NCBI RefSeq assembly: GCF_001194135.2 | Contig: NC_068986.1 | Coordinates: forward strand, 53,694,085 to 53,758,084 | Direction of reading: 5' to 3' | DNA length: 64,000 nt | Source: Octopus bimaculoides | Lineage: Eukaryota | Part shown: positions 1 through 64,000 of the stretch, piece after piece | Layout: each line of letters begins with the position of its first letter | Numbering within the stretch: the first letter of the stretch is position 1 | Position numbers and translations under genes: made by a program | The notes under the pieces: model-generated | What the model was told of the DNA's origin: nothing | The model's input: only the letters and a program-made list of their open reading frames with translations | Databases searched by the model: none

Positions 1-1325
1 ACTGAGAGTACAGAAAGGAAAACCATCACACAAAGAACGTTGAATATAGCAACAAAGAAGGTAGAAATAGCAGCCGTAGAAGCGGTCGAGGAGTGCTTAA
101 AAGAGATAAAGGAGATAACCACGTTCTAGACCAGAGGACGAAAGTTCGGCACGGTAGAGGTGCGCTTCGCCAATGAAAACGAAGCTAAGAAATACTCCAC
201 CGTAGCCTTGAAATCGGCGGAGTGGGCACTGTTACCTACTTACTGTGGAAAACGTGCGGCCAGAGTAAGGATAGGGAGAGTGCCCCCTGAAATTGACGAG
301 GCATGGCTTGTGGCAGCCATCCTCTACAATACAGAAGATGAAGCGGAAGTCCTGAAAATGTCGAAGACTGCGAAGTTCAATTGGTGGGGATAACGGTAAT
401 GGTCTATATCGGCTTACCAGACCGCCATAAGATTGTTGAAGAGCTCGTTTAACCAAACTGAGAATTATAGTGGAAGGTAGACCTCCAATATGTTTTTCAT
501 GTGGAGTAAGAGGTCACATGAAAGCCAAGTGTCCCCAGTAACACGAACAGGAGGAGGCGGAGAAGGAGAGTCGGGAAGAAGAGATTGTAACGGCAGAGGA
601 GGAAAAGGAGTTTACATTGGTAGAAAGGCAGAGAAAAAACAGCGAATCTCCACCAAAAAAGAAAAGGAAGGTGGAGGAAAATGAGAACGAAAAAGAAAAA
701 ATCAGATATCAATGGGAGATCGAACGCAAAGACCAGAACCTTCAACTAGTAAGGAGGAGAAAAGACGGAAGTAGAAACTAGAAAGTGAGAAAGAGGAACA
801 AATACCGATAGAAATACTAACAACAGAGAGTGAGGTGATACAGGCGAGAAAGCCACCGAAGAGGAGATACGAAGGAATTCTGGTTGCATACGAAAAGAGC
901 ATGGAGATAGAGAAAAAGGATTGCCAAGATGAAAGGCGTTATAAGAATTATGCTGGCCGAAAAGGAGGGGAAACAGAATGAGAAAGCAGTGTTGCTGGAA
1001 GATGAGAGAGCAGGAAGATTGAGAGAAATATTCGGAGACAGGATAGAAATAACAGCATTACGATTTAGATACGACGAACTACCATCAGTGACAGATTTCC
1101 AGGAGTTAATAGAATTTATGGTGTGAACACGATACAAACTGGAAAAACAATTCTTGATGTAAAAACAGTAAAATGGAACTTTCTACTTTGGTAGGTAGGA
1201 AAGCCATTTCATTCTCATTATTTTCATAATTCATTCGCTAATTGTTTGTATGTACCCCATGTTCTGTGTTGTCTGTCTTTGTGGTGTCTTTTCAAAACTC
1301 AGGCTTTATGCCTATAGTAAAGAAA
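1..1325 (+). mobile_element. ORF1/Gag-only retroelement copy 1 (RRM-like + CCHC), decayed, 5' end outside the window
   Basis: Frame +1 reads ...TRGRKFGTVEVRFANENEAKKYSTVALKSAEWALLPTYCGKRAARVRIGRVPPEID, with stops at 127-129 and 391-393. Frame +2 carries the zinc knuckle CFSCGVRGHMKAKC at 491-532. A Glu/Lys-rich linker follows, then the C-terminal RLREIFGD segment (929-1126), a 3' UTR with AGGC-TTTAT-GCCT (1301-1313) and AGTAAA. Confidence 0.8.
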
Positions 1326-1629
1326 CCCATTGTCAACTGAAATTTCTTTTTTTAATAATTGGTAATGGTGTTATCTCAACAATGTCCTCTTTCTGATTAT
1401 CGGTTATATCAACATTTTATCCTAATTAAAAAGCCCTTTCCAGTAATGGTCTATAATCACACGACAAAACTGTCGAAATTTACAATGAGAACTTTTATTT
1501 CTCAGCCTACCTTGTTAGCTAAAAAGAAACTTCTGAAACACAAATGAAGCATTGAAAATCTGAATTTGTTATATTCCGCTAATGTATTCGAGGGATACCT
1601 TTTTTTTTTCTTTATGTAACATAAATTAG

Positions 1630-8063: not shown

Positions 8064-9517
8064 TGATTCTTTATTCACAAAGGGATTAAGCAGAGGAGAC
8101 TGTATAGGACATTACAAAGTGGGGTGAAATCGAATTAAAAATGAATGATTATATAAGGAAAAAGTTTGAATGATGGTTACCGGGCCCCACGACCCAGGTA
8201 ACATCATTGAACATTTTTTTTTTACAATGTACATAAATTTTCAGTTAGTTTTACTTTGCTTGAAGTCGCTACAGTTTTCATCATTTCTTTTCTTTTTTGA
8301 GAATTTATTTCTCTCTGCAGTTACTTGCTCATGTGTGTTTGTGTATTCGTGATTTTTCACTTTTGTTTATGGGAGGGAGAGAACGAGCGTTTTTCTTCCT
8401 CCCAGCAACTTTCCATTCACCATCACTTACCTCTGTAGACGTTGATATTAACGGTGTCATCTTTTGTCGTGACCATTTCTCTCTCCATCTCCTGCTTCTC
8501 CCCTGGGACCTCCTCTTCACCTTTCCTCCTGCTGCACACTGGCCTCCCTCTGACTTTCTTCCTGTGCTTCAGGTTGTAGGGCTGGGGGGGGCACGTTTTA
8601 CTTGTGTGCCCCGTCTGTCTGCACTCTAATTCTGCCCTGCACGGTGACTTTTAACTTCGTTTCATCCGGAAGAATGACGAATTCCGGTATACCATCAATG
8701 TCCGCTGGTATGGCTTGAATCGTTGCTCTTAAGCCTCTGCCACACCAATTCTGAACACTTTTCTCCTCCAAACTCCCAGTGTTACCTCTTTTCTTGGCGA
8801 AGGCGGCTGCCAGGAGCTATGTCGGTTTAATTTCCCATGCGAACCCTTGTATCGTTATTTTTGTTTTGCCGAAGTATGTCGGCAAAAGAGCCAGTTCCTT
8901 GGTCTGCAGGGTGATTGCTAAGTAGACCTTGGCATCATTCTCAGCTATAAACTGAGCCTCACCCTACCATATTTCCTTTCACGTCTCACAGATGCTAGTG
9001 TGTACATAATAGGCTTCAATGCTTTCCATCTCCTCTATCTTCTTAGTCTTCAGCGACAGCGTCCTGTAAATCAGTTTTGCTCTTCATTTCCTCCATTACC
9101 TCTTTGGTGGGAGCTAACCTTACGTTAGCTCCCTCCCCGCGAAAAATTATTTGAAATTTCTTTATGGCCTCTGGCTTGATGTTGGACCGTTTCAAGCATA
9201 TCCTTCCGTGCTTTCTCCTGAATCGCTGGTGTATCCCAAGTCACCGTCGCTCTTCCAGAGCTCGTACATATCATCTTCCATTTTGTGTAGGCACACCCTA
9301 TACGAAGTGTAAATAATTCGCCGCTAAACGGAGGAAAACAGCAGGAAACAAGCCTGTAAAGGCCAACAATATGTCGCAAAACACTAGCAGTTCTTTGACA
9401 ATTTTTCAACAAAGGTCGTCCCAAAAGCGAAAACCTTCAACAAAAATCAACGGTAGTTCAACAATTGACTTTCGATAATAAATATGAATAACCGTTACAC
9501 GCGATGAAATCAACTGT
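8064..9517 (-). mobile_element. ORF1/Gag-only retroelement copy 2, apparently full length (~1.45 kb), with a 14-bp flanking direct repeat
   Basis: ACGAGGACAACTGC occurs at both 8050-8063 and 9518-9531. Candidate ATG at 9281-9279. The decayed ORF reads LIYRTLSLKTKK..RKYGRV..QFIAENDAKVY..ELALLPTYFGK, then the knuckle remnant CRQTGHTSKTC and EWKVAGRKKN. AATAAA at 8075-8070. Confidence 0.8.
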
Positions 9518-11461: not shown

Positions 11462-13485
11462 CAGATGTGTGTGTAATCGCTTATCACGTGAAAACGGCTT
11501 CACTATTTACTTGTGATACATGAATAATTTGACCTCGGATAAATCTTAGGCTCTTCATTTGATTTTTTTTATCTCTAATTAAAAATAAATATTGCTTTAT
11601 ATTTAAGATTCACTTGTTTAAAAAGGTTTCTCAATGTCAACTTCCGGTACGGACATGACAAAAACGGCGACGTCTCTCACTCTCTACTTTTAATGTTCGC
11701 TTTCTGTAAACAACTACGATNNNNNNNNNNNNNNNNNNNNNNNNNNNNNNNNNNNNNNNNNNNNNNNNNNNNNNNNNNNNNNNNNNNNNNNNNNNNNNNN
11801 NNNNNNNNNNNNNNNNNNNNNNNNNNNNNNNNNNNNNNNNNNNNNNNNNNNNNNNNNNNNNNNNNNNNNNNNNNNNNNNNNNNNNNNNNNNNNNNNNNNN
11901 NNNNNNNNNNNNNNNNNNNNNNNNNNNNNNNNNNNNNNNNNNNNNNNNNNNNNNNNNNNNNNNNNNNNNNNNNNNNNNNNNNNNNNNNNNNNNNNNNNNN
12001 NNNNNNNNNNNNNNNNNNNNNNNNNNNNNNNNNNNNNNNNNNNNNNNNNNNNNNNNNNNNNNNNNNNNNNNNNNNNNNNNNNNNNNNNNNNNNNNNNNNN
12101 NNNNNNNNNNNNNNNNNNNNNNNNNNNNNNNNNNNNNNNNNNNNNNNNNNNNNNNNNNNNNNNNNNNNNNNNNNNNNNNNNNNNNNNNNNNNNNNNNNNN
12201 NNNNNNNNNNNNNNNNNNNNNNNNNNNNNNNNNNNNNNNNNNNNNNNNNNNNNNNNNNNNNNNNNNNNNNNNNNNNNNNNNNNNNNNNNNNNNNNNNNNN
12301 NNNNNNNNNNNNNNNNNNNNNNNNNNNNNNNNNNNNNNNNNNNNNNNNNNNNNNNNNNNNNNNNNNNNNNNNNNNNNNNNNNNNNNNNNNNNNNNNNNNN
12401 NNNNNNNNNNNNNNNNNNNNNNNNNNNNNNNNNNNNNNNNNNNNNNNNNNNNNNNNNNNNNNNNNNNNNNNNNNNNNNNNNNNNNNNNNNNNNNNNNNNN
12501 NNNNNNNNNNNNNNNNACTTTTACGAAAATTAAAATGGGGATTAAATGAAAACAATGATTTACGTGAATATCCTCACAAGAGTAATTGAAATAAATGGCG
12601 ATTGTGGAACCCCCCACGCACGCACGCGCGTGCGCATATACACGTTTGTCTTTGTAAATATGTTTGTATACATTTATATATGTGTGTGTTTGTAAGAGAC
12701 AGTGTGAGTGTGAGAGGTTTGTTGTCATGTATACGTACATGCATAAATATACATACATCTTTGGATGTATGCATATGACAACACAGCCCTTGACTCACTC
12801 ACTCACACTCTCTCTTACAAACACGCCCGCACGCGCATACACACGTGTGTCTTTGTAAATATGTTTGTGTACATTTATGTATGTGTGTTTGTAAGAGACA
12901 GTGTGAGTGAGTCAAGGGGTGCATGTGTGTGAGAGCGGTGTGTATGTAGTATTTACTCTCTCTCTCTCTCTCTCTCTCTCTTATACACACTCACACACGA
13001 AATAGAGAGTGAAGCTTTTTGCCGTTGTTACGTCAATACCGGAAGTTGACATTGAGGAACCTTTTTAAAGTGAATCTTAAATATAAAGCAATATTATTTA
13101 TTTTTAATTAAAAAAATCAAATGAAGAGCGTAACATTTATCCGAGGTCAAATTATTCACGCATCACAAGTATGGAAGCATTTGAAGTCGATTTCACGTGA
13201 AAAGCGATTACACACGCATCTATTTTATATATAGTATAGATTTACTCTCCCTCTCTCTCTCTCATACACACGCACACACACACAAAGATGTATGCATGTA
13301 CGTATACATAACAACAAACCTCTCTCTCTCTCTCTGTCACACACACACACACACTTCCATTTCATCTGATGTGTGTGTGTGAGAGGGGTTCCACAATCGC
13401 AATTTATTTCAATTACTCTTGTGAGGATATTCACGTAAATCATTTTTTCATTTAATCCACATTTTAATTTTCGTAAAAGTTTCCA
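11462..13485. repeat. Composite foldback/inverted repeat with microsatellite core, interrupted by a gap
   Basis: 11462-11690 is the reverse complement of 13001-13225. 12518-12613 is the reverse complement of 13385-13480. A direct duplication lies at 12618-12716 / 12822-12918. Confidence 0.65.
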
Positions 13486-13639
13486 AGTGCCAATGAGGCT
13501 TTTTGGCGCATCTTCAATTTTTCAATTCATGAGTCTATCTACAGAATGTCCTCAGATTTCTATACAGCATATTTTGCTTTTTTCCTTCCAGTGTATAAGC
13601 AACAATTTCATTCCCGAGCAACGCCGGGTTACTCTGCTA

Positions 13640-13683
<44 letters not shown>

Positions 13684-14599
13684 TCAGTTACTTGACTTTA
13701 TACATATTAGTTTCTGACGTATATCAGGAATTTATATAAGAATAAAACAGTTCTTGATTTGGATTTTGCTTTTATTGAAGTCGGTCAAACTATATGTCCG
13801 GTTGTCTAAAATCTTATCCGCTAGAAAATTTCAGTTCTGTAAATCAAATATTGGACGGTTGCTATTGATAGCTTCTTTTAAAGATCATTCTGTATCCTGG
13901 ATATTTAGTTTGCTTGTCCTTGGAAATTCTCCAAACGTTTCATTACTTGACATTTATCCCTCTCACTGTCAGTTACTCATGCCGTTTCACTAGCTAGTGG
14001 TAATTCTCTGACTACTTCAGTTTACAATTCGTTAAGCATATTTAATATCTAGTCGTTCTAAGGATCAGTTATAGCAGGGTTTTTTTGTTTTTTTTTTATT
14101 ATATTGTTTAGTTGAATCATTGAGGACAAATCTGAGGTAGGCTCTGGTGGAAATATGTTGACAGCATGGCACGGTTTGAAATGCTAGATCTCAAAATAGT
14201 CGAATACGATGTTACTATATTTCTTTCTTATGTTTACAAGATGTACTGTTTATAACTGTTTTTTTTCATTTATAAAGGCAGATATATTTACATTTATTTT
14301 CGGAAAAAATTCCGTCGGCACAGTTCTCAATTTATAGCATGAAAATCGGAGGAAATATAGGTTTCACGTTACGACCTGGTGAATTTTGAAGTACACAGGT
14401 TTCGTAACTTGGATGTCTATATTTTCATTCTACTAGATAACTATATTACGTGAAATTTTTCTGAAAAAAAAAAAACTGAACTTCCCTCATGCATCTCGGC
14501 TTCTAACCTTGAAATCAAGTTGGAATGGAAATAGCTTTTGCGTTACCGAATTCCGAGAAGCGACAAAATAAATGCCTATCAAGCATTGAAGCCTAATTA

Positions 14600-14900
14600 A
14601 TCGATAATTTTCTTTAGCCCTTTACTCCCTATGGAACTTAGGCCATTGGTAACTTTTCTCCACAGTTCTCAGCTCTGTGTTACCTTTCCTGCTTCTCTCC
14701 AGTTGGCGCCCTGCCTTTCCTGCTCTGCATCTATATCCTTCCTCCAGCTATTTGTTTTTTGTTGTGGTGGTGGTGGTGGAAGGGATGTCCCACCTTTTTG
14801 GGTTTCAGGTTAGAACCTAACGTGTAGTGAAAAATTTTGGTTTTTGATTTTAAGCGGTGGCTTAGGAAACCTTTCGGGTTTTTTCTCCCTAGAAGGAAGG
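14600..14900 (-). mobile_element. RTE LINE 3' end remnant
   Basis: Translation fragments LSHRLK..VLT*NP..WRKDIDAEQERQGANW..LWRKVTNGLSS resemble the RTE C-terminus GHTLRK..ALTWNP..WRRD..W.. followed by GLCS. Confidence 0.6.
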
Positions 14901-16939
14901 CATTCTTTTTGGTTTTCAATTGTCATCGACGCTTCTGTGACTACGTTGTTTTTCTTTTTTTACCTCTGTCCCCAGAATTTGGTCCATATTAGTCTGGCCT
15001 CTACCCAGCATAGTTGTCCTATCAGGAGCTTGCACTTTCTTGGCATAGTTCTCAGGCTCGTTGAGGCACACACACCAGCACATCGTAACAAGGACTGGAC
15101 CTTGTCAACTAATCGGCAACACCGCTCATCTATACTATATTCGTGCAGCTATTAGAAATCGTATTGGCAATTGTAGTAATTCTATTAGGACACCTACTGA
15201 TACTTCCAAATTTGTTCCGTTTTATTACATTTTCTGATTATCCAACTCTTGCTAATCGATAACTGTTTGGTTAGAAGCAGCAGTAGCCCTAATTCTTCAA
15301 TGTCAGAATATTGCTACCATTTTAGTCGATGTCTAATTCGTTGAATTGCGTTCTACATTCTATAGAAGTGGGGTTTTTATTTTGAGTAATTATCTCCTCC
15401 AGGCGTTTACTTCTGTAGCTGGAGCTAAAGTTGTAAAATGCTTTACTGTTTAACCAGAAATTAGTTCTGTTCGAGCAGACGCATGATCGAGGGCGTTCTA
15501 ACTATGACTATTCCGCTTTGTTTTTAGCCTCTCTTCGATTACATTATCTAACGAGTTATCACTTTTAAAATGGAAGTGTAGTGTTTTTTAAGCTATTTCT
15601 AACAGTTCAAATGATGTAGAGGCTTTATCGTTGCCTCGGCCATTTACAGCTGCAGTCAGCACCGGATTTACACTTAGTGAGGCCCTAAGCTATATAAAAG
15701 CTTGGAATCCCTTTGTTATATTACAAGTTTCACAAAAATTGAAAATGTATGCACTTTAATTATTTTGAAAATCCTACGGATTGAGATTCGAAATTGTAGC
15801 TGGGTTAGCTATGTCTTAAATCTCACACTGGTAGTTGTCAATTTAGCACCGCTCTGCGTAACACCACTTTGTAATGTTTTTGCTGAGCGTTTTGTTCCAA
15901 GTATTGGCACTAAGCATCTGTCAGAGGGTGTTATTCGGTGCCTGTGAAAGCTTTCTTAGCTGAAGTGGAATAGAATAACCTCTCTTTTAGTAATTAATGA
16001 ATGGTGGCTTTTTCAAGCATTGTGCGGTGTGGAGAGGCCCTGCAAAAATCACTGATTTCTGACATGCTGGCGATTATGATTTAACCTTAAGTTCATCTCT
16101 TCATTCACTGAACGTACACTTTTTTTCGTTACTTTCTTTCAATGAATTGAAAATTCGTTGGATAATTCTTTTTCCTTCTGCCAATAGCCAGTTCGGTTGT
16201 TTTTGTAAATCCTATGGTATGTTCAAGCTGTTTTAAGCCAACTCTTCGGAAAATGTTTTCACTTAGTATCTACTGGCCTGCCATCTCCTTTCGCTTGAAT
16301 GTTAGCAATAAAAATATCCAGAAACAGCATTCCTCTAAGCGTCTCTTTTCCGACCTCATAAAAAAAAATCTTTACTATATTTCATCCTCTATTGAAGACA
16401 TCTAGGTCATATTTTTCTGCTGCTGATTTTTTTTTTAAAATCAGTACACATATTTCCTCTTGTCTTTCAAACTCTTCATATTGAAGACGATTATTTTACA
16501 TCGTAATCAGTCAGCACTGGAGTCTAACCTATTTATTTCTCTGGTTAACACATTTACTTTCTAAATACTCCGACGCCTTTCGTACTGCAACTATCCCCCG
16601 TTTCTGTCTTTTTCATAAGGCCAGTCAATTAACCTCCTGAACAACCCAGAACCTCTTGGTAATTTAATTCAACTGGCCTTAGCCACTTCTACTTTTCATA
16701 TACATGACAGGAAAAGTGCTTTCTCTCGAGCGTATCCAAGTTAAGCTGAACTTTTCAGAAAACCGATACCATCTTCCTAGATCATACCATCAACATTCAC
16801 AGCACTAAAAATCCCAAGTAGTTTACTTTCAAATAAGCTACTTCTGTACAATCGCAGAACACTGCTGACAATATCCCAAATGAGTTGTTACTAATTCTAA
16901 TCAATTAGTAGGCATTTACTACCACAATGCTTGCAAAAT

Positions 16940-17340
16940 TATGAAAACCAAACAATATCTTCGTGCCGTAGTCTGCAAGATCCATCGCCTTTCAAATTGT
17001 AATCGAACTCTTTGGTTGCTTTATTAAAAGGCTCTGACTTTCCAGATTTCATCATTTCACTTTCAATAACTCTACACATTTTTTTACCCCTCGCTTCCAA
17101 ATTTTTTATTCTTGGTGAAATCATGGATCCGTATCTGGAAAGCGTGTACTTTCGTCTGTGTTGGTTGGGCGCGATGGTGTACCTATTCAGGGTTAAGTTG
17201 TACTTCTACCTAGCTCACACAAAAAAAAAAGCAAATTCGCTTACCCTCACGGTGTCCTTAGGCGTGCAGCTCATAGCTCCGTCTATCTTCAATGGTAACT
17301 GGAACTAACTAACTTAAACGCATGCGCATAAGCGAGCTAC
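16940..17340 (-). mobile_element. ORF1-only element array unit E (5' region and possible N-terminal ORF1 remnant)
   Basis: Begins GTAGCTCGCT directly after the AATAAA of the preceding unit. It shares ACC..GAGGTA.G.GAAT..T-run..TGAGCT with 20435-20300. ISPRIKNLEARGKK..VIESE weakly resembles ITFKVFSLKGKK..VEAE. Confidence 0.45.
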
Positions 17341-18534
17341 TTTATTACAATATCTTTGCCATAAAGGCATTACACAGAGGGGACACTACAACACATGTGG
17401 GGACATATAACAATTAAAAATGATATAATGAATGATACATGAAAATGCACGTGAATAACAAATTTAAAATATAACATGAATGATATCTGAAAATGATACG
17501 AAGAGCGTGCTACTCATCCCACAGAGTAACGCCACTCGCTGCCTCTGAGNNNNNNNNNNNNNNNNNNNNNNNNNNNNNNNNNNNNNNNNNNNNNNNNNNN
17601 NNNNNNNNNNNNNNNNNNNNNNNNNNNNNNNNNNNNNNNNNNNNNNNNNNNNNNNNNNNNNNNNNNNNNNNNNNNNNNNNNNNNNNNNNNNNNNNNNNNN
17701 NNNNNNNNNNNNNNNNNNNNNNNNNNNNNNNNNNNNNNNNNNNNNNNNNNNNNNNNNNNNNNNNNNNNNNNNNNNNNNNNNNNNNNNNNNNNNNNNNNNN
17801 NNNNNNNNNNNNNNNNNNNNNNNNNNNNNNNNNNNNNNNNNNNNNNNNNNNNNNNNNNNNNNNNNNNNNNNNNNNNNNNNNNNNNNNNNNNNNNNNNNNN
17901 NNNNNNNNNNNNNNNNNNNNNNNNNNNNNNNNNNNNNNNNNNNNNNNNNNNNNNNNNNNNNNNNNNNNNNNNNNNNNNNNNNNNNNNNNNNNNNNNNNNN
18001 NNNNNNNNNNNNNNNNNNNNNNNNNNNNNNNNNNNNNNNNNNNNNNNNNNNNNNNNNNNNNNNNNNNNNNNNNNNNNNNNNNNNNNNNNNNNNNNNNNNN
18101 NNNNNNNNNNNNNNNNNNNNNNNNNNNNNNNNNNNNNNNNNNNNNNNNNNNNNNNNNNNNNNNNNNNNNNNNNNNNNNNNNNNNNNNNNNNNNNNNNNNN
18201 NNNNNNNNNNNNNNNNNNNNNNNNNNNNNNNNNCAACAAGGACAGCTGCCGTCACTCAAGCTACTTCTATATCCGGTGGAATTGCTTCTATCCTCACCTT
18301 GGAAGTCTTTCTTCCAAGGTATGTGTGCAGAAGCACTACCTCCTCTGTTTTCACCGCCACACTCGCCAGCTTCCTCGCCTCCTCTATTGTTCTAAATTGT
18401 ACGACCATTGTGCCATATTTTCTTCCTTTCGTCATGTATATTATTTCTTTCGACTTCTCTGTTAGTGCTTTTTCCGTTTCAGCTTCCACCTGCTCGGCCT
18501 TTTTCCCTTTTAGTGAGAACACCTTAAAGGTGAT
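17341..18534 (-). mobile_element. ORF1-only element array unit D (RRM-like region, gap, 3' UTR)
   Basis: Intact-looking frame ITFKVFSLKGKKAEQVEAETEKALTEKSKEIIYMTKGRKYGTMVVQFRTIEEARKLASVAVKTEEVVLLHTYLGRKTSKVRIEAIPPDIEVA at 18534-18256. The 3' UTR has the TGCC-TTTAT-GGCA stem (17369-17357) and AATAAA (17346-17341). Confidence 0.8.
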
Positions 18535-18839
18535 NNNNNNNNNNNNNNNNNNNNNNNNNNNNNNNNNNNNNNNNNNNNNNNNNNNNNNNNNNNNNNNNNN
18601 NNNNNNNNNNNNNNNNNNNNNNNNNNNNNNNNNNNNNNNNNNNNNNNNNNNNNNNNNNNNNNNNNNNNNNNNNNNNNNNNNNNNNNNNNNNNNNNNNNNN
18701 NNNNNNNNNNNNNNNNNNNNNNNNNNNNNNNNNNNNNNNNNNNNNNNNNNNNNNNNNNNNNNNNNNNNNNNNNNNNNNNNNNNNNNNNNNNNNNNNNNNN
18801 NNNNNNNNNNNNNNNNNNNNNNNNNNNNNNNNNNNNNNN

Positions 18840-19830
18840 AATTTGCCACGAGGGCAGAACACAGAGGTAGCTTTGCGGGCTGGACATAAACATTAACGAA
18901 CATGAATGATTATGAAATGAAACAAGATGGGGGAGAACGAACGATGCCCACCAATCGCCGCCTCTCGAAAACACTGTTCTTTTTCAAAAACACATTGAGG
19001 TTTTAAACCTTTTAAATAAAACTAATTTGAGGTTCTCTTGTTACAAAAAAAAACACAATATATAACTTTAATCAGGCACTAGTCCTCTTATCAATTTGAC
19101 TGCTTCAAAGCAGTCCCTAGTTTTCACGTTATGGTGAACTATGCTGACAAAAGAGTCTTCGGAGAAGATCTCGGCAATCCTGCTGCGGACCTCCCCGGTT
19201 ACGATCTCCGCAGCTATGTGCGAAGGCCACCCCGGAGCATCCGTACAGCTCAGTTCGTATCCGTCCTCTCCTACTAGCTCATGAATCTTTGCTTGTACAC
19301 TTATTCCCACCTGACAAAAGAAAACATATCCTTTTAGGTTGGGTGGGGTCTGTACACTCTGTGGTAGACACACTTCCTCTTGACGGAGTTTCGTCCTCCT
19401 TCAGTGGCCCAATTCCCTCTGAAGGAGTCTCAATCTCTGCCGGTAGCACACTACCTGCTGCCGGCNNNNNNNNNNNNNNNNNNNNNNNNNNNNNNNNNNN
19501 NNNNNNNNNNNNNNNNNNNNNNNNNNNNNNNNNNNNNNNNNNNNNNNNNNNNNNNNNNNNNNNNNNNNNNNNNNNNNNNNNNNNNNNNNNNNNNNNNNNN
19601 NNNNNNNNNNNNNNNNNNNNNNNNNNNNNNNNNNNNNNNNNNNNNNNNNNNNNNNNNNNNNNNNNNNNNNNNNNNNNNNNNNNNNNNNNNNNNNNNNNNN
19701 NNNNNNNNNNNNNNNNNNNNNNNNGGGGGGGGGGGGTCCCTCAAGAATCACTGGGTACCTTGACCACGCCGTCCTTAAAAGGCCCGGAAACACCAGACTA
19801 GCAATCGACTGGGACCAGAGGGTCAATACC
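18840..19830 (-). mobile_element. ORF1-only element array unit C (5'-truncated; C-terminal domain and 3' UTR)
   Basis: YPVILEGPPP precedes the gap at the position where copy 1 has IIVEGRPP-CCHC. ORF 19373-19068 contains GWPSHIAAEIV..RIAEIF. The 3' UTR matches 20646-20436 (GTCCAGCCCGCA..GCTAC) and carries the stem TGCC-CTCGT-GGCA (18856-18844). Confidence 0.75.
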
Positions 19831-20435
19831 GCTTTTGAAAACCAAAATTAGAAGAAATAAATGAAATGAGAAAAGAAAATAATTGTGTTCCGGCAGGGAA
19901 TCCTATTTTCTGAACAAAAACGTTCACTTCGACTGTTATTCCAGCTGTCTGAGTTCTGTTCTTGACACACTCCGCAATGCAGGGTAAATCCACAGGGAAT
20001 GTTCAAATTTGGCAAAAAATGCCACTCAAAATTTCACGAGAATTGAAACAATTCAAAAGTTCACCTTCTTCGTAATGGTAAATCCACATGCAGAATTAAA
20101 TTGGCAAAAATGCCACACCAAATTTCACGAAGAAATCTTTCCCCTTCGTCGCTGTGTTGGCACGCCCACCCACAACGACGAATGAGGAACACAGATTTTT
20201 CTCGCAAAGCGAGCAACAACTACAGTAGCATAAAGGAGAGGAGTTGCCCAGAGCTTGTGAAAAGATATATACAACAATAATTCTCACTCAGCTCAAAAGA
20301 AAAACGATTCCACCTACCTCGGTCGACTTCTTCGTAATCACTTCTTCGGGAGAGTGTAGACTTTCGACCGCCTTGTTCAATGTTCTTACCGGAAGTAGCT
20401 CATCCGCGCAAGACCGGAAATGGTGAGCAAGCTAC
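19831..20435 (-). mobile_element. Array unit B: ~600-bp non-coding segment starting with the family 5' junction motif
   Basis: Starts GTAGCTTGCT after AATAAA. No ORF1 homology was seen. Internal duplication at 19983-20040 / 20077-20132. Confidence 0.45.
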
Positions 20436-20963
20436 TTTATTTCAATAAATTTCGCCATTAACGGCGTTACATAGAGGGGACAGACAAAGATGAAGTAGCT
20501 GCGGGCTGGACATGGACATTAATGAGATGAGGGTGATAAGGATGAAACAAATGAGAGAGGCACCAGCGCCCGCCGACTAATAACCCTTCGAAAACAGTTC
20601 TTTTTTTTTCCTTTTAAAATTACAATTTTTCCACAATTTCAATATATTAACAATTAAAAATATCACAATTTTCCTCATTCCACCCGTCCGCAAGCAGATA
20701 TGCTGTCCCTGCCAAACAAGTGTCTATTGTTAGGCTTGAATTTGCGGCGAGGTAATAGAAATCTTTATGGTTATATTTTTCTATGACTTTTGCCAATATG
20801 TTGTCATTTAGAACCTCCGCAGTTACCTGTGGAGGCCATGTGGAACTACTCGCACAATCCGAATAGCTCCAAGAATTCATTCACCGCCCCTCCCTCATAG
20901 TACATGATAATATAATCATTATCCACACTGGGAGGGACGTCACGCCACTCTGTCATCGGCACA
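20436..20963 (-). mobile_element. ORF1-only element array unit A (C-terminal domain and 3' UTR)
   Basis: ORF 20880-20647 contains TWPPQVTAEVL, homologous to GWPSHIAAEIV. The 3' UTR has the CGCC-GTTAAT-GGCG stem (20466-20453) and AATAAA (20441-20436). Confidence 0.75.
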
Positions 20964-22249
20964 NNNNNNNNNNNNNNNNNNNNNNNNNNNNNNNNNNNNN
21001 NNNNNNNNNNNNNNNNNNNNNNNNNNNNNNNNNNNNNNNNNNNNNNNNNNNNNNNNNNNNNNNACTGGCAATATGACCATCCCCAAGTACAACAATATAT
21101 ATATATACTTATACATATATATATACATATGCATGTATGTATGTATACATATAGGCTTGAAACTCATAACTTTTCATTTCTTCGTACTAAATAAATTTCT
21201 GCTGTTTTGACTAGTTAGGGCAGTTCAGCTTTAACGTCACTCAAGTAGTATTATAATACCCGATGTGGCATGGTTATCTCCCTGTATGATTTTCAACCAT
21301 GGTGTAGCTGCGATTACCTCCCTTAATCTTGTTTATGCACGAATCGCTGTTTTCTATGCAGGACTCCCCAAACTTTTTAGACTAGTAGTTCTCAACCTTT
21401 TCCTGGCCATCGTTCCCTAAACGCTATTTTTGACATAAGCTAACTGATAATCGCCCACCAAAAAATTATGACAAATATTAAATATAATGTAATTGCGACT
21501 AATCAACACGAAAGAAATGTACATGTAAATGCAAAAGCTAAACGAATTAAAATAAAACTTTATTTTAGATTTAAATGTAGAAAAGGACTAGCTAGTGTGA
21601 GCCATGAAATTGGTGATGTTCCGCTAAAAATTCAATGTCAGGCTTATTGCTGCTCAAACAAATACGAATATCTCCACGTGAAATATTGTCAAATCTGTTT
21701 CTTTCCTTCCGCAAAATGTGATGGACAGTACTAAATCCAGTTTAGACAAGATATGACGTCGGGAAACTCAATCTTAATTTGAAATTTATCATTACATTTC
21801 ATCTCGATGATTTCCTCCTGAATATTTTCGTATGCACTGTGAAGAAACAATTTGTCATGATATTTGAATTTCCTTATTGTTAAATAAAATTTCATCAAAC
21901 AATTTCTTTATTTGTGACTTTATCCACTCCTTATCGTTTTCTCTTGTATTGTACTATATATTCTATATGTCTTGTAGAATGATACAATAAGGAGCTTTTT
22001 TTATGAGTACTACCGGATTACGTAAATCCGTATACAGTGACTTAAATTTATATATTTCAAACCTCCGAGTATGACATCCTGCTGTCTAAAATGTAAAGAA
22101 TATATTGGATAACGTAACATGAAAAAAAGAAAACAGAAATGGTCACAGATAAAATATCTGTTTTCATAGATTTACTCAACCATGAGTTGAAATGGAATTA
22201 AACAAGACCAATTTTATAACAGACGATTTCCAAAATTGACGCGAAACCA

Positions 22250-41997: not shown

Positions 41998-42345
41998 TGA
42001 AGGCCCATGGCTCAGTAATTAGAGTGCAGGGCTCACAGTCATGAAGTAGTGAGTTCGATTCCTAGGCCAGGCTGTGTGCTGTGTTCTTTAGCAAGACACT
42101 TTATTTCATGGAGCTTGAGTTCACCAAGCTGTAGAAATGAGTTGCAACATCACTGGTGCCAAGCTGTATTGGCCTTTGCCTTTCCCTTGGATAACATCAG
42201 TGGCGTGCAGTAGGAAGGGTGGTATGCATGGGCAACTGCTAGTCTTCTATAAACAGCCTTGCCCAGACTTGTGCCTTGGATGGGAACTTTCTAGGTGCAA
42301 TCCCATGATCATTCATGACAGAAGGAGGTCTTTACCCTTTACAAA
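41998..42345 (+). mobile_element. tRNA-derived CORE-type SINE family S4
   Basis: A box TGGCTCAGTAATTAG, B box GAGTTCGATTCC, then TGTGTTCTT.AGCAAGACACTTTATTTCA. A related head lies at 59415-59730(+) and a body fragment at about 56005-56110. Confidence 0.75.
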
Positions 42346-53649: not shown

Positions 53650-53960
53650 ATGTTGCCTGAACATCTCTAAGTCAATGTCAGCAGGATGTTTATTGGTGTG
53701 AGGGAATTAAGAGTGTCGACACTGATGGTGATCTAATCACTTAGCTGACTTGAACTGTCATAGGAGTGTAGAGAGTATGAAATATATGGCAACTGGTTTT
53801 GATTAGGCAATGGAAAAGGATCCGATAGATATAAAGATAGTGACAGCCTGGTAAAGACTGGCACTGGAGGTAAGAAAAAGGTCAACTATGTGTGGAGTGT
53901 TTGTGCATGAGTCAGGGACACAAGTGACAGTACTGTTGCAGTAAGTTCCTATTTGCATAT
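53650..53960 (-). mobile_element. CR1-group LINE AP-endonuclease fragment
   Basis: TCVPDSCTNTPHIVDLFLTSSASLY..IGS resembles the CR1 APE end TRIPD..P..LDLFLTS.P..Y...LGSSDH. Confidence 0.6.
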
Positions 53961-56900
53961 GCATTGTTAAGAAAAAGTTTGCTTTCCAATCAGACGGTTT
54001 CAGATTCAGTTCCACAGTAAGGCACCTTGTGCAAGTGCTTTCTACTATGGTTCTGGGCTGACCAAAGTCTTGTGGGTGAACTTGGTAGACAGAAACTGAA
54101 AGAAACCAATCATGTGTGTGTGTGTGATCATCATCATCGTTTTAACATCCACTTTTCCATGCTTGTATGGATCAGGTGGAATTCACTGAGAAAGCTTTTT
54201 TAAGATCTGATACCCTGTCTGTTGCCAACCCTCGACTGTTTTCAAACAAGATAATATTTCCTTATGATCTGACATGCTTTACATGGAAGACTGGAAATGA
54301 GGAACATCACGTGATGTCAAGACAAGGAAACATACATACATACACACAAACACACATGTGTCCATGTGTGTGTGTTCTCCTTGCTTTGACATTACGTAAT
54401 TTCCACAACTCTACAATGTGACCGTCATAGCAATATAATTTGCAGAACTATACGTGAGACATCTGCATGAGATTGAACATGTATATAGTTCTACCAATTA
54501 TATTTGGAGTTATATTTCAAAAGTCTTCGTTTTGGCATGCCAAATGCCACTTACGTTCTGGCGTTTGCTGAATTTTCCTTTCAGTTTCCACCTATCAAAT
54601 CTGCCTATAACATTTAAGTCAGTTTGTTTGGCAAACAGGTGGATTCAGATCCAATACCACTGTCCAGAACCTCAAGCAAATATCTACTATGTCCCTGGGT
54701 CAACCAGTGCCTTGTGAGTGAATTTGGTAGAAAGAAATTATGTGAAGGTCTGTCAAATGTATGTATATATGTTACATGGTTGGGTCATCAGTGACTAAAC
54801 TGACAACCTCACCAAGTCTGGTGAGTAGGGTGGCTTTTGGTTTTGTGGGATGCAAAACAAAACCTGTCAAAGGGCAGATGAATTCAGGAGAATCAATGGC
54901 TATCCATTTAAAACCACCAGCAGTGAGGGACCCCTGGCTGTTGTTGTAACATCTTTTGATGAGAGGGACACTCTGATGCAAAACGCGCAGTTTCACATGA
55001 TTACCAGTTATCTCACTTCAACCTATCACTAGGTATTAACCATGGAGACTTAGAGAGTGGTACTCATGTTGTACAAGTATTTCTCACTATAATCCAATGG
55101 CCTACATATGTCTCTCTATGTTGGCCTCGTTTGTTATTCCATCTGCTGAAAATCCCATGGTAATGGAAGAGTGGCAACAGGTGCAGAACTTAACCAGCTG
55201 AAAAGTGCAAAGTTACAGAGATCTGCAGCAAGACTGAATAGTCATCTGAGAGATCATGGATGGAAAGTCAGTAATGCCATTGACAATGAGCCAGTGAAAA
55301 GAGACAGCAATCATCTGTTTAAATGGAGCTGTCACCATGTGTAGGTAGGTGTGAGTGTGTATATATGTGTCATTGTGTTTGTCTCTTACAGCTTGACAAC
55401 TAGCGGTTTAACAGGGAGATTGATAGAATACATACCAGACTTAAAGAAGAAAGTACTAGGGTCCATTTGACTGAATAAACTATTCAAGGCAGCATCTAAC
55501 TGAAACCATTAAGAGTATACATATATGTGTGCATGCATATATATATATATATGCATACACACACCATATATATACATATATATAGACACACAGATAACAA
55601 ACTATTTCAAATATATACATTGCGAAATGTATGTTACAATATATGGTAAGTATTCTGCAAATCAATTGTGTAACTATAATTTATTTCCTCGTTGTAACTC
55701 TTTCTGTCTCATTGCCACACCAGCATTTTCCCATGGATTAATTATCACCATTAAGACCATGAATTGGAAAAAATCATTAGGATGTTAGGTAGAATACTAT
55801 ACAGTTTTGGGGGTTTTTTTTGTTGTTTTATTTTTTGGCTCTCTGCACTCCTGTTGTGGCTTGTTTTGCCTTTCATCCTTTCATGGTCAATAAATGAAAA
55901 GTACCAGTCCAAAGCAGCAGATTGGCAAAATTGTTGATGTAGTATATCTTGCAGTATCTCCCACAGCTCTTTGCATTCTGAAGAAAACACCTGCAAAAAC
56001 AAGTGCACTGTTGTATCAGCCCTTGCCTTTCCCTAAGATAATGTTAGTGATGTGGAGACAAGAGACCTGCATGCATGGGCAACTCCTATTTATCTATAAA
56101 TGAACCTTGAGTAGACCAGCACACAGGAGAGAAACTTTCCAGGTACATATAGAAAAAAAATCAGACATGATTGTAGCTATTTTTCAAATCTCCATTCTTT
56201 ATAACTGACATTTAAGCCATGCCCAACCTATCTTCTCTGGAACGTTATATTTAGGACCACTTTTCTTTTGATAATAGACTCAAATGTAAGATTTGGTTAC
56301 ATTTCTGTAAAGGCTCACTTATTGTCTCGTATGTATATTTTATAAAGCTCTGTTACTTTCAGTGTGCAAAAGTGACTGTTGTTATTGTTGTTGAGCACCA
56401 GGTCAGTTCTGGTCAAGCAGGCTTATGGTATATAGTTATTTGAGTGACAACAAGCATTCCAAATATCAGCACGACTGGACCTAACCTGGGGCTACACTTC
56501 AAAACACCAAAACTTAATGACTATTTTTCAGGGGCTTTTTCTCTTTCTCTTTTTTTTTTTTTTTTAGTTTTTGTGAAAATACAGCATCTATATAGAATAT
56601 TATTTTTTTTTCTTTTTAGGTGGTGGATGAACTTGGTATCTTTAAACATCTAATTGAATTTTAGTTGTTTTTCTCACATGAGTTATATTTCCTTTGATTT
56701 AATTTTTACACTTGTAATATAGAAATAACATCAATTGAACAAAATAATAACCAGGTAACTTTAATTATTTCTACCAACATTAGAATCACTACTAAAACAG
56801 CAATCACCACCAACCCCAACAGACTTAATAATCATCACAATCACACATACTGGCAATAGTAATCAATACTCTCTCAAATTATACCCTACCACCTTGAAAA

Positions 56901-63622: not shown

Positions 63623-64000
<378 letters not shown>

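What the first reader, a model, noticed from the sequence alone, without database searches (positions are those of the whole stretch)
16940..20963. Head-to-tail array of diverged units joined by a conserved AATAAAGTAGCT(C/T)GCT junction
Seen in sequence: four to five same-strand units abut directly. Two visible junctions match at 15 of 16 nt (17346-17331 and 20441-20426), although the flanking units are quite divergent. After the junction both continue into related sequence (ACC..GAGGTA.G.GAAT..T-run..TGAGCT). Because the units are diverged, recent tandem duplication does not explain the array. Inference: either new copies insert precisely at the 5' end of an existing family member (self-targeting, as in HeT-A/TART arrays or site-specific Tx1 elements), or read-through transcripts copy the neighbour's 5' end. 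Three gaps obscure other junctions.
Basis: partly seen in the sequence, partly recalled or inferred. Interest (0 to 1): 0.75.

Follow-up and report, generated by a model that had tools for sequence, protein, structure and literature searches.

The report
Stacked LINE-derived retrotransposons in octopus
The region is a same-strand pile-up of dead copies of an octopus L1/Tx1-type jumping gene (mostly versions that kept only its first gene), and the repeated 16-letter "junction" is the element's conserved tail plus ten letters that are most simply the duplicated insertion site; this is ordinary retrotransposon biology, though the family's habit of inserting exactly at the edges of its own copies is worth a note.

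Summary
The 16-mer AATAAAGTAGCTYGCT is real: it occurs exactly twice, on the minus strand, each time inside a contig.

What precedes it is the conserved 3' module of a LINE family. The module carries a 4-bp hairpin with compensatory changes. ORF1 is a tandem-RRM plus CCHC protein. Relatives carry an L1-like ORF2 with endonuclease, RT and zf-RVT. The window holds five decayed copies: A, B and C in the finding, and E and F elsewhere. C, E and F show the ORF1-only layout (about 1.45 kb); A and B show only 3' parts. F has an exact 14-nt target-site duplication.

What follows the 16-mer shows no detectable family homology.

In gap-free loci of O. sinensis and O. vulgaris the same family forms head-to-tail arrays. 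In O. sinensis, two units are bracketed by 16- and 17-nt duplications that start exactly where the preceding unit ends. New copies therefore do insert at unit boundaries.

My best reading is that the window holds such an array and that GTAGCTYGCT is a sandwiched target-site duplication. It could instead be a subfamily 3' or 5' terminus; I could not separate these.

Verdict: a new member of a known kind, of moderate interest.

The parts
20436..20963 (-). Unit A. It holds a decayed ORF remnant (20962-20647, one frameshift, stop TAA at 20649-20647) and a 3' UTR ending in AATAAA (20441-20436). Its 5' part is lost in the 100-N gap 20964-21063.
   Evidence: The 3' UTR is 72.8% identical to unit B over 125 nt, and the 57-nt module is 84% identical to unit C. 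The covariance model of the family 3' module hits 20446-20486. Assigning the ORF to the ORF1 C-terminal domain rests only on motif and position, which is weak.
20453..20466 (-). Hairpin of the 3' module in unit A: CGCC(G)-TTAA-(T)GGCG.
   Evidence: The pair types differ from those of units C and B (TGCC/GGCA), unit E (AGGC/GCCT) and the O. sinensis and O. vulgaris copies (GCCC/GGGT).
20426..20441 (-). Junction 1. AATAAA (20441-20436) is the family 3' terminus. GTAGCTTGCT (20435-20426) is a candidate sandwiched target-site duplication.
   Evidence: The stretch AAGTAGCTTGCTCACCA also matches the head of an abundant SINE at 16 of 17 positions.
19725..20425 (-). Post-junction stretch B5 (701 nt). 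It has no long ORF and contains an internal 55-nt repeat (20130-20077 / 20039-19983). It is either the long 5' UTR of unit B or unrelated DNA. A poly-G run lies at the gap edge, 19725-19736.
   Evidence: There is no hit to the family core or N-terminal HMMs and no similarity to any known 5' UTR. The internal repeat was found.
18840..19465 (-). Unit B, 3' part. It holds an ORF remnant (acidic stretch and C-terminal piece, stop TAA at 19070-19068) and a 3' UTR running up to the module hairpin (18856-18844). The 3' terminus itself is hidden in gap 18535-18839.
   Evidence: The covariance model gives a weak hit at 18836-18876 (E 0.67); this copy was not used in training and is cut by Ns.
18234..18534 (-). 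Unit C, ORF1 piece covering the first RRM-like domain. A TGA at 18258-18256 stands where relatives have W, so the copy is dead.
   Evidence: The family HMM matches 18537-18235 with E 1.9e-38. The piece is 38.7% identical to copy E. A phmmer search found 96 relatives, the best 78% identical.
17341..17549 (-). Unit C, 3' UTR with the 3' module. The hairpin TGCC-TTTAT-GGCA lies at 17369-17357. The unit ends in AATAAA (17346-17341).
   Evidence: The covariance model scores 44.2 bits at 17349-17389.
17331..17346 (-). Junction 2: AATAAA followed by GTAGCTCGCT (17340-17331).
16939..17330 (-). Post-junction stretch D5. An ATG lies 206 nt after the junction and opens a 61-aa ORF (17124-16939) with no detectable relatives. 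Nothing family-like follows down to 12517.
8064..9517 (-). Copy F, an isolated ORF1-only element of 1,454 nt. It is flanked by the exact 14-nt target-site duplication GCAGTTGTCCTCGT (9531-9518 and 8063-8050) and ends in ...AATAAAGAATCA with no poly(A).
   Evidence: HMM hits at 9089-8304 (E 1.6e-24) and 9192-9073 (N-terminal model). Covariance model hit.
1..1326 (+). Copy E, an ORF1-only element running off the window start. It holds the tandem RRM-like region, a CCHC knuckle (about 490-540), a K/E-rich stretch, a C-terminal piece, and a 3' hairpin AGGC-TTTAT-GCCT (1301-1313) followed by ATAGTAAAGAAAC.
   Evidence: HMM match at 4-945 with E 1.1e-57. Covariance model hit.
17550..18233 (.). Assembly gap inside unit C. 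The other gaps in the finding are 18535-18839 (which would hold the B|C junction), 19466-19724 and 20964-21063.
   Evidence: Continuity could not be tested with reads.

Best explanation
The finding is a local head-to-tail stack of at least three dead copies (A, B, C) of an octopus L1/Tx1-type LINE family. Copy C has the ORF1-only layout seen in E and F (5' UTR, ORF1, 3' UTR; about 1.45-1.7 kb); A and B show only 3' parts.

Each copy ends in a conserved 3' module. The module consists of GTCCCCTCT.TGT, a 4-bp hairpin, an A-rich tail and AATAAA. It is presumably what the family's reverse transcriptase recognises.

The stack grew by successive target-primed insertions at one and the same spot, immediately behind the 3' end of a resident copy. 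Each insertion duplicates the few bases that follow that spot. Every junction therefore reads 'family 3' end + the same short duplication'. In this window that is AATAAA + GTAGCTYGCT, and what comes after it differs from junction to junction.

Shown:
- family membership, the 3' module, and a target-site duplication on the isolated copy F;
- in O. sinensis, two insertions exactly at unit boundaries, each with a 16-17-nt duplication.

Inferred:
- that the window's ten bases are such a duplication;
- that the hidden B|C junction carries it as well;
- that the homing comes either from endonuclease preference or from pairing between a short read-through 3' extension of the RNA and the target.
For: Family:
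- The ORF1 piece of unit C has 96 relatives. The named ones are Octopus bimaculoides, O. vulgaris and O. sinensis proteins.
- The ORF1 core folds as tandem RRMs (pLDDT 80-95 over residues 100-260; the top PDB matches are all tandem-RRM proteins). It also has a CCHC knuckle (Pfam).
- Relatives carry an ORF2 with Exo_endo_phos + RVT_1 + zf-RVT. Its closest solved structure is human L1 ORF2p (E 2e-71).

3' module:
- It is shared by copies A, B, C, E and F and by all O. sinensis and O. vulgaris units.
- The hairpin pair types are CGCC/GGCG, TGCC/GGCA, AGGC/GCCT and GCCC/GGGT.

Arrays as a family trait:
- Locus L006 (no gaps) has six same-strand abutting units that are 75-89% alike. Locus L005 has three units.

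Boundary insertion with a sandwiched duplication:
- In L006, GGATGTGATATAATGA occurs at 2479 and 4186, around the ORF1-only unit Ua.
- AACTGAATACTCGTCAT at 14629 and AACCGAATACTCGTCAT at 19899 bracket unit Ud.
- Each duplication starts at the end of the preceding 3' terminus, and similarity is lost abruptly after it. The window shows the same signature.

Window geometry:
- The three 3' ends lie about 1,620 and 1,475 nt apart, using the gap estimates. That equals the ORF1-only unit length (F is 1,454 nt; Ua is 1,691 nt).

Precedent:
- Tandem SINEU-3 insertions 'sandwiching a TSD' in a target-preferring SINE family, discussed alongside the target-preferring Tx1 clade (PMC4494074).
Against: - Only the two outer copies of the putative duplication are visible. 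The B|C junction and the 5' side of unit A are in gaps.
- Ten bases is shorter than the family's other duplications (14, 16 and 17 nt).
- The visible 701 nt of B5 contain none of the ORF1 that a full unit B should have. B must therefore have a long 5' UTR with an under-estimated gap, or an internal deletion, or the contig is misplaced.
- A third copy of the same hairpin type (contig L016, same species) is followed by ATAGCTTAAT. This fits a subfamily terminus or a target preference at least as well as it fits a duplication.
- The same 10-17-mer also sits in the head of an abundant SINE, which I cannot explain.
Confidence: 0.5

Rival explanations
1. GTAGCTYGCT is simply the last ten bases of the 3' terminus of the A/C subfamily, and what follows is unrelated flanking DNA. 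The three copies would then be a chance or scaffold-made cluster.
For: - Conservation rises toward the very end: about 80% in the module and 15 of 16 in the terminal 16-mer.
- Similarity stops dead after GCT, and neither downstream stretch has any family signal.
- In copy F the element ends six bases after AATAAA (GAATCA), which aligns with GTAGCT in the pattern G.A.C..
- Contig L016, which has the same hairpin type, is followed by ATAGCTTAAT.
- A 14/16 version of the 16-mer (AATAAAGTGTCTTGCT) exists as a contiguous string inside another SINE.
Against: - Every family 3' end whose limit is fixed by a target-site duplication stops 2-6 bases after AATAAA. This holds for copy F and the O. sinensis units.
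- The spacing of the three 3' ends equals one unit length, which this reading does not explain.
- The family demonstrably stacks in two sister species.
Confidence: 0.25
2. GTAGCTYGCT is the conserved 5' terminus of the next family member. The units would be joined without any duplication. This could happen by reverse transcriptase jumping from the 5' end of one RNA to the 3' end of another, or by retrotransposition of read-through transcripts.
For: - Contig L013 (same species) has GTAGCTTGCTT about 270 nt upstream of an ORF1 start.
- In D5 an ATG lies 206 nt after the junction, which is a typical 5' UTR length.
- The duplication-defined 5' end of copy F, ACAGTTGATTTCAT, can be aligned by eye with GTAGCTTGCTTCAT of L013.
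- Genuine 5' UTRs of this family do not resemble each other, so missing similarity is weak evidence against.
Against: - In L013 the ten bases are the continuation of a SINE head. The 25 nt upstream match that head at about 20/25 by eye, and nhmmer gives E 0.0015. They need not belong to the LINE.
- No ORF1 follows in D5 within 4.8 kb of contiguous sequence, nor in the visible 701 nt of B5.
- In O. sinensis the joins do carry duplications.
Confidence: 0.15
3. The array is wholly or partly an assembly artefact. Short repeat contigs (301 and 626 nt) from other loci would have been scaffolded between two unrelated insertions.
For: - There are four gaps in 4 kb, one of them a 100-N placeholder.
- A poly-G run lies at a gap edge.
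- The two middle contigs consist of repeat sequence only.
- B5 does not fit the expected unit layout.
Against: - Both junction motifs lie within contigs.
- All four contigs have the same orientation and follow the order a stack would have.
- Gap-free assemblies of two sister species show the same kind of stack.
Confidence: 0.1

Closest known systems
Target-preferring L1/Tx1-clade LINEs, and the tandem SINEU-3 insertions that 'sandwich a TSD' (Kojima 2015, PMC4494074)
   Same: - The ORF2 has an APE endonuclease, an RT and a C-terminal zinc motif. ORF1 has RRMs and a CCHC knuckle.
- Target-site duplications are 14-17 nt.
- Repeated insertion into one site leaves one duplication copy between neighbouring units.
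- L1-Tx1 elements are listed as recently active in O. vulgaris (PMC13282606).
   Different: - No single external target sequence is evident here. In O. sinensis the re-used site is the boundary between two copies of the family itself.
- Dispersed copies at unrelated sites also exist (copy F).
- Placement of the RT within the Tx1 clade proper was not tested.
HAL1 ('half-L1') elements of mammals, which are ORF1-only derivatives of L1 (from my own knowledge: Bao and Jurka 2010)
   Same: - They keep the 5' UTR, ORF1 and the parental 3' end but lack ORF2.
- They spread as families with their own target-site duplications. Examples here are copy F in the window and unit Ua in O. sinensis.
   Different: - The host is different and the ORF1 type is different (tandem RRM + CCHC rather than coiled coil + RRM + CTD).
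- The 3' end has no poly(A) tail; instead it has a stem-loop module.
HeT-A / TART / TAHRE arrays at Drosophila telomeres
   Same: - Head-to-tail, same-strand arrays of LINE-type elements.
- The arrays include a member that encodes only the Gag-like ORF.
   Different: - Those elements attach to chromosome ends without target-site duplications.
- Here the O. sinensis and O. vulgaris arrays lie 32 Mb into a 40-Mb record and 71 Mb into a 110-Mb record, and their units carry duplications.
R1Bm and SART1Bm, where bases at the RNA 3' end pair with the nicked target to set the start of reverse transcription (PMC7265360, citing Anzai 2005)
   Same: They offer a way for a short read-through 3' extension, here the first bases of the downstream neighbour, to guide new copies to the same kind of site.
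   Different: This is purely an analogy.
Double insertion of transposable elements as a source of tandem dimers (McGurk and Barbash, bioRxiv 10.1101/158386)
   Same: Two or more insertions at one site produce head-to-tail copies that can later expand. The three 99.4%-identical units in O. vulgaris may be such an expansion.
   Different: That work describes Drosophila populations and mostly other element classes.

Membership tests
L1/Tx1-group non-LTR retrotransposon (autonomous LINE) | An ORF2 with an apurinic-type endonuclease and a reverse transcriptase | tested here: not met
   No ORF2 was seen in any of the five window copies. In C, E and F, ORF1 is followed by a roughly 200-250-nt 3' UTR. 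Relatives do have it: in L005, ORF2 is 1,132 aa with Exo_endo_phos, RVT_1 and zf-RVT, and it matches human L1 ORF2p at E 2e-71. The window copies are therefore derivatives, not autonomous members.
L1/Tx1-group non-LTR retrotransposon (autonomous LINE) | An ORF1 with RRM fold(s) and a CCHC zinc knuckle ('type I' ORF1p) | tested here: met
   The AlphaFold model of P0041 (same species, intact ORF1) has pLDDT 80-95 over residues 100-260. The top 20+ PDB matches are tandem-RRM proteins (E 7e-5 to 1e-3). Pfam zf-CCHC scores 27.2 bits in P0041. Copy E carries CFSCGVRGHMKAKC. Pfam RRM models themselves do not match.
L1/Tx1-group non-LTR retrotransposon (autonomous LINE) | Insertion by target-primed reverse transcription, leaving target-site duplications | tested here: met
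   Copy F has an exact 14-nt duplication. The O. sinensis units Ua and Ud have 16/16 and 16/17 duplications.
L1/Tx1-group non-LTR retrotransposon (autonomous LINE) | A 3' poly(A) tail | tested here: not met
   All 3' ends stop 2-9 bases after AATAAA with no A-run. The family looks like a 'stringent' type with a 3' stem-loop.
Sequence-specific Tx1-clade element | The same target sequence at independent insertions | tested here: inconclusive
   RTAGCT follows three 3' ends of one hairpin type (A, C, L016), and GTAGCTTGCTT precedes one 5' UTR (L013). Copy F and the O. sinensis units sit at other sequences. The sample is too small.
Sequence-specific Tx1-clade element | The RT groups with the Tx1 clade in a phylogeny | not tested
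   No reference set of LINE RTs was available. Only the L1-like versus R2-like distinction was made.
ORF1-only ('half-LINE', HAL1-like) non-autonomous derivative | Keeps the 5' UTR, ORF1 and the parental 3' end, lacks ORF2, and spreads as its own copies | tested here: met
   Copy F is 1,454 nt with its own duplication. O. sinensis unit Ua is 1,691 nt with its own duplication and has the same 3' module as the full-length units. Copies C and E have the same layout.
Telomeric LINE array (HeT-A/TART type) | Located at a chromosome end, with units added without target-site duplications | tested here: not met
   The related arrays lie at 31.9 of 40.2 Mb and at 71.0 of 109.7 Mb, and their units carry duplications. 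The chromosomal position of the window itself is unknown.
Tandem (segmental) duplication or satellite | Units diverged evenly along their length | tested here: not met
   In the window, identity is 84% in the 57-nt module, 60-73% in the rest of the 3' UTR, and about 20% at the amino-acid level in the ORF remnants. The criterion is met only for the three 99.4%-identical O. vulgaris units.

The most novel reading that the evidence does not exclude
This octopus L1/Tx1-type family homes to the boundaries of its own copies. The first nick would fall exactly behind a resident 3' end, perhaps guided by pairing of a short read-through RNA extension with the neighbour's first bases. Full-length elements and their ORF1-only parasites would then build kilobase head-to-tail arrays at many internal chromosome sites. 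This would be a self-made 'safe harbour' that has not been described for cephalopods. The unexplained sharing of the 10-17-mer with the head of the most abundant SINE could mean that SINE heads are a second preferred landing site.
Probability: 0.3. Interest if true: 0.6.

Novelty: new member of a known kind. Interest (0 to 1): 0.4.

Why it matters
- It explains a puzzling 'conserved junction between diverged units' without invoking a new mechanism.
- It identifies an abundant octopus repeat family: an L1/Tx1-type LINE with ORF1-only derivatives and a SINE that shares its 3' module.
- It gives direct sequence evidence from a gap-free O. sinensis locus that this family re-uses the exact boundary of resident copies as an insertion site.
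- If that holds genome-wide, it would be a clean natural example of self-targeting by an APE-type LINE. It would also be a practical warning for octopus assemblies, since such stacks are where short-read scaffolds break.

Tried and rejected
RNA-gene explanations:
- Spliced-leader, snRNA, tRNA or hammerhead genes. Rfam gave nothing at gathering score over the whole window. Only one chance-level hit appeared at E<=10 in 16.5-21.1 kb. ARAGORN found no tRNA.

Other sequence explanations:
- A tiny intron at GAGGTA...T-run...GAG. It would be too short (26-31 nt), and the similarity is not significant.
- A host gene cluster. Rejected because the ORFs are broken and relatives carry an RT.

Searches that gave nothing useful:
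- Pfam on the ORF fragments found nothing.
- The word-indexed protein search with the unit C piece found nothing. The exhaustive HMMER search did find relatives.
- Comparing B5 and D5 with seven to nine known 5' UTRs gave nothing. The known UTRs also fail to match each other, so the test has no power.
- A SINE-head HMM over B5 and D5 matched only the 18-mer at the junction (E 1.1).
- A covariance model of the 3' module found no further copies in the window.
- Two scans of metagenome contigs for the junction and for the module gave 0 hits.
- A paper search for the SRA run ids gave 0 hits.

Folding:
- Energies of the junction regions are not better than shuffles (z -0.9 to +0.8). Only the small hairpin is supported, and that support comes from covariation.

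Full report
**What the window is.**
- The window is animal DNA with about 33% G+C, thirteen N-gaps and many (TA)n/(CA)n runs.
- An intact ankyrin/TPR ORF at 30744-32021 is found letter for letter on Logan contigs of runs SRR11869384/85/94.
- The repeat family described below has named relatives only in Octopus bimaculoides, O. vulgaris and O. sinensis.
- The window is therefore from an octopus, most likely O. bimaculoides.

**The observation.**
- Read on the minus strand, AATAAAGTAGCTCGCT lies at 17346-17331 and AATAAAGTAGCTTGCT at 20441-20426.
- With up to two mismatches allowed, 0.06 matches are expected by chance.
- Two further two-mismatch hits, at 42090 and 59500, lie in copies of an unrelated SINE.
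- Both exact copies are inside contigs (12517-17549 and 19725-20963), so they are not scaffold joins.
- The conserved block is 57 nt at 84% identity and lies almost wholly upstream of the 'junction'.
- Downstream, similarity stops after GCT. The first 200 nt after the two junctions align no better than 9-36 of 500 dinucleotide shuffles, and longer stretches give z = 1.2.

**The gaps.**
- Exact-protein look-ups of three ORFs of the region found no public contig.
- Homology gives a partial answer. Both flanks of gap 17550-18233 belong to the same unit (C), and the estimated size fits the family layout.
- The other three gaps, including the one that must hold the B|C junction, cannot be judged. 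No statement about reading frame is possible.

**What the units are.**
- The piece 18534-18259 translates to an open 92-aa stretch. Exhaustive HMMER finds 96 relatives.
- A profile of those relatives hits three places in the window: C (18537-18235, E 2e-38), E (4-945 on the plus strand, E 1e-57) and F (9089-8304 on the minus strand, E 2e-24).
- The protein has a variable N-terminus, a core that AlphaFold models with confidence, and a CCHC knuckle. A low-complexity stretch and a small C-terminal piece follow. Foldseek matches the core only to tandem-RRM proteins.
- On an ENA contig, ORF1 is followed 34 nt later by the start of an endonuclease ORF.
- In O. vulgaris, ORF1 is followed by a 1,132-aa ORF2 with Exo_endo_phos, RVT_1 and zf-RVT. 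This ORF2 matches human L1 ORF2p at E 2e-71 and R2 proteins only at 1e-24.
- The family is therefore an L1/Tx1-group LINE. L1-Tx1 elements are listed as recently active in O. vulgaris (PMC13282606).
- No ORF2 was seen in any window copy. F is a complete 1,454-nt element with an exact 14-nt target-site duplication, so ORF1-only derivatives transpose in their own right.
- Copies A, C, E and F show stop codons or frameshifts.

**The 3' module.**
- All copies, all O. sinensis and O. vulgaris units, and the tail of one SINE share the same module. It reads GTCCCCTCT.TGT, a 4-bp hairpin, an A-rich stretch and AATAAA(G).
- The hairpin keeps pairing through changes on both sides: CGCC/GGCG, TGCC/GGCA, AGGC/GCCT and GCCC/GGGT.
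- Overall folding energies are unremarkable.
- There is no poly(A) tail.
- A covariance model of the module finds A, B, C, E and F and nothing else in the window.

**Arrays in sister species.**
- Two 21-kb loci were fetched through family proteins: O. vulgaris OX597840.1 and O. sinensis CM016867.1.
- Both consist of same-strand, abutting units.
- The O. vulgaris units are 99.4% alike, so they probably arose by a recent DNA-level duplication.
- The gap-free O. sinensis locus has six units that are 75-89% alike, one of them ORF1-only.
- At every join the 3' module is followed directly by the next unit's 5' UTR.
- Two units are bracketed by direct repeats. GGATGTGATATAATGA (16/16) brackets Ua. 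AACTGAATACTCGTCAT and AACCGAATACTCGTCAT (16/17) bracket Ud.
- In both cases the repeat begins at the base after the preceding unit's 3' end and consists of the first bases of the downstream unit. After the repeat the two flanks diverge abruptly.
- For Ua's repeat, those bases can be aligned by eye with the 5' terminus seen at the left edge of the O. vulgaris array, where it meets non-family DNA.
- New copies therefore did land exactly on an existing unit boundary, twice, in one 21-kb sample.

**Reading the window in that light.**
- The two junctions have the same signature: a family 3' end, a short near-identical string (9 of 10), then unrelated sequence.
- The three 3' ends are about one unit length apart.
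- The simplest account is repeated insertion at one site with GTAGCTYGCT as the sandwiched duplication. 'Tandem insertions sandwiching a TSD' have been described for SINEU-3, a target-preferring SINE family, in a paper that also reviews the target-preferring Tx1 clade (PMC4494074).
- I hold this at about 0.5 because three facts do not fit neatly.
  1. The visible 701 nt after junction 1 contain no ORF1.
  2. A same-species contig with the same hairpin type (L016) is followed by ATAGCTTAAT. That would also suit a subfamily terminus or a target preference.
  3. The string AAGTAGCTTGCTYACCA is native to the head of the window's most abundant SINE (16/17, z 5.9; at least 11 copies). On contig L013 that SINE head runs straight into a family 5' UTR at GCTT.
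- I could not tell whether the third fact reflects a preferred landing site in SINE heads, a chimera made by template switching, or chance.

**Mechanism.**
- Shown: insertions leave target-site duplications of 14-17 nt, a conserved 3' stem-loop module stands where other LINEs have a poly(A) tail, and unit boundaries are re-used.
- Inferred: the family's reverse transcriptase recognises the module, and the first nick falls just behind a resident 3' end.
- Speculative: because AATAAA sits only 2-9 bases from the element's end, transcripts should run a few bases into whatever lies downstream. In an array that is the neighbour's first bases, which could pair with the same sequence at other boundaries and guide the next insertion. 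A requirement for downstream target sequence is reported for R1Bm (PMC7265360).

**Verdict.**
- The thing itself is a new member of a known kind: a target-preferring L1/Tx1-type LINE, ORF1-only derivatives, and tandem insertions that sandwich a duplication.
- The self-boundary homing is the only part that would interest a specialist. It needs a genome-wide count, which these tools could not provide.

Noticed in passing
window 30744-32021 (-): An intact 425-aa single-exon ORF with ankyrin repeats and a TPR-like stretch, resembling fem-1. The identical ORF is found on three Logan contigs of runs SRR11869384/85/94.
   Followed up: partly
window 7082-6680 (-), 50110-49690 (-), 27528-27346 (-), 40907-40723 (-), 26387-26572 (+), 53945-54125 (+) and others: An abundant SINE with at least 11 copies in 64 kb. 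It has a head of about 165 nt, an internal (TA)n run and a tail ending ...GAAACAAGTAAAAGAG. Its head contains GGTAAGTAGCTTGCTTACC, the same 10-17-mer as the junction of the finding. This sharing is unexplained.
   Followed up: partly
window about 42300-41990 and about 59700-59400: Two copies of a second, tRNA-like SINE. It carries AGCAAGACACTTTATT, the reverse complement of a 14/16 version of the junction motif. By eye it matches the A|B junction region at 19 of 23 positions.
   Followed up: partly
L013:439-479 (Logan contig SRR11869391, same species): The first 37 nt or so of the abundant SINE head run directly into a LINE 5' UTR and ORF1. This is either an insertion into a SINE head or a chimera made by template switching.
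   Followed up: partly
L006:590-650 (O. sinensis): A SINE tail carries the same 3' module as the LINE family (…CCTCTCTGTGTTTAGCCCCTTGTGGTTAGTAAAGAAAT). This suggests the LINE is that SINE's mobilising partner.
   Followed up: no
L005:4445-19184 (O. vulgaris OX597840.1): Three full-length LINE units of 5,273 nt, 99.4% identical and in tandem, followed by a 100-N gap. Unit 1 has open reading frames of 503 aa (ORF1) and 1,132 aa (ORF2), so it may be an active element.
   Followed up: partly
window 19725-19736: A run of 12 G directly at a gap edge, probably a sequencing or assembly artefact. Most gaps in the window are bordered by (TA)n or (CA)n runs, for example 21095-21153, 32484-32520 and 63623-63660.
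   Followed up: no
protein P0001: A 484-aa predicted protein. Its first 160 residues or so are 78% identical to the ORF1 piece of unit C. The rest is a C2H2 zinc-finger array. This is either a chimeric gene model or an exonised element.
   Followed up: no
L004 (ENA ERZ25513664 NODE_109, 2,209 nt): An intact 603-aa ORF1 of the same family, followed by the start of ORF2, from a sample of unknown organism. The family may therefore not be confined to Octopus.
   Followed up: no
L006:14691 and L006:9348: The 5' UTR of unit Ud holds a second, internal copy of CTGAACTTTGACCGACTGAATAC. The same string also forms the extreme 5' end of unit Uc. This hints at older nested boundary insertions.
   Followed up: no
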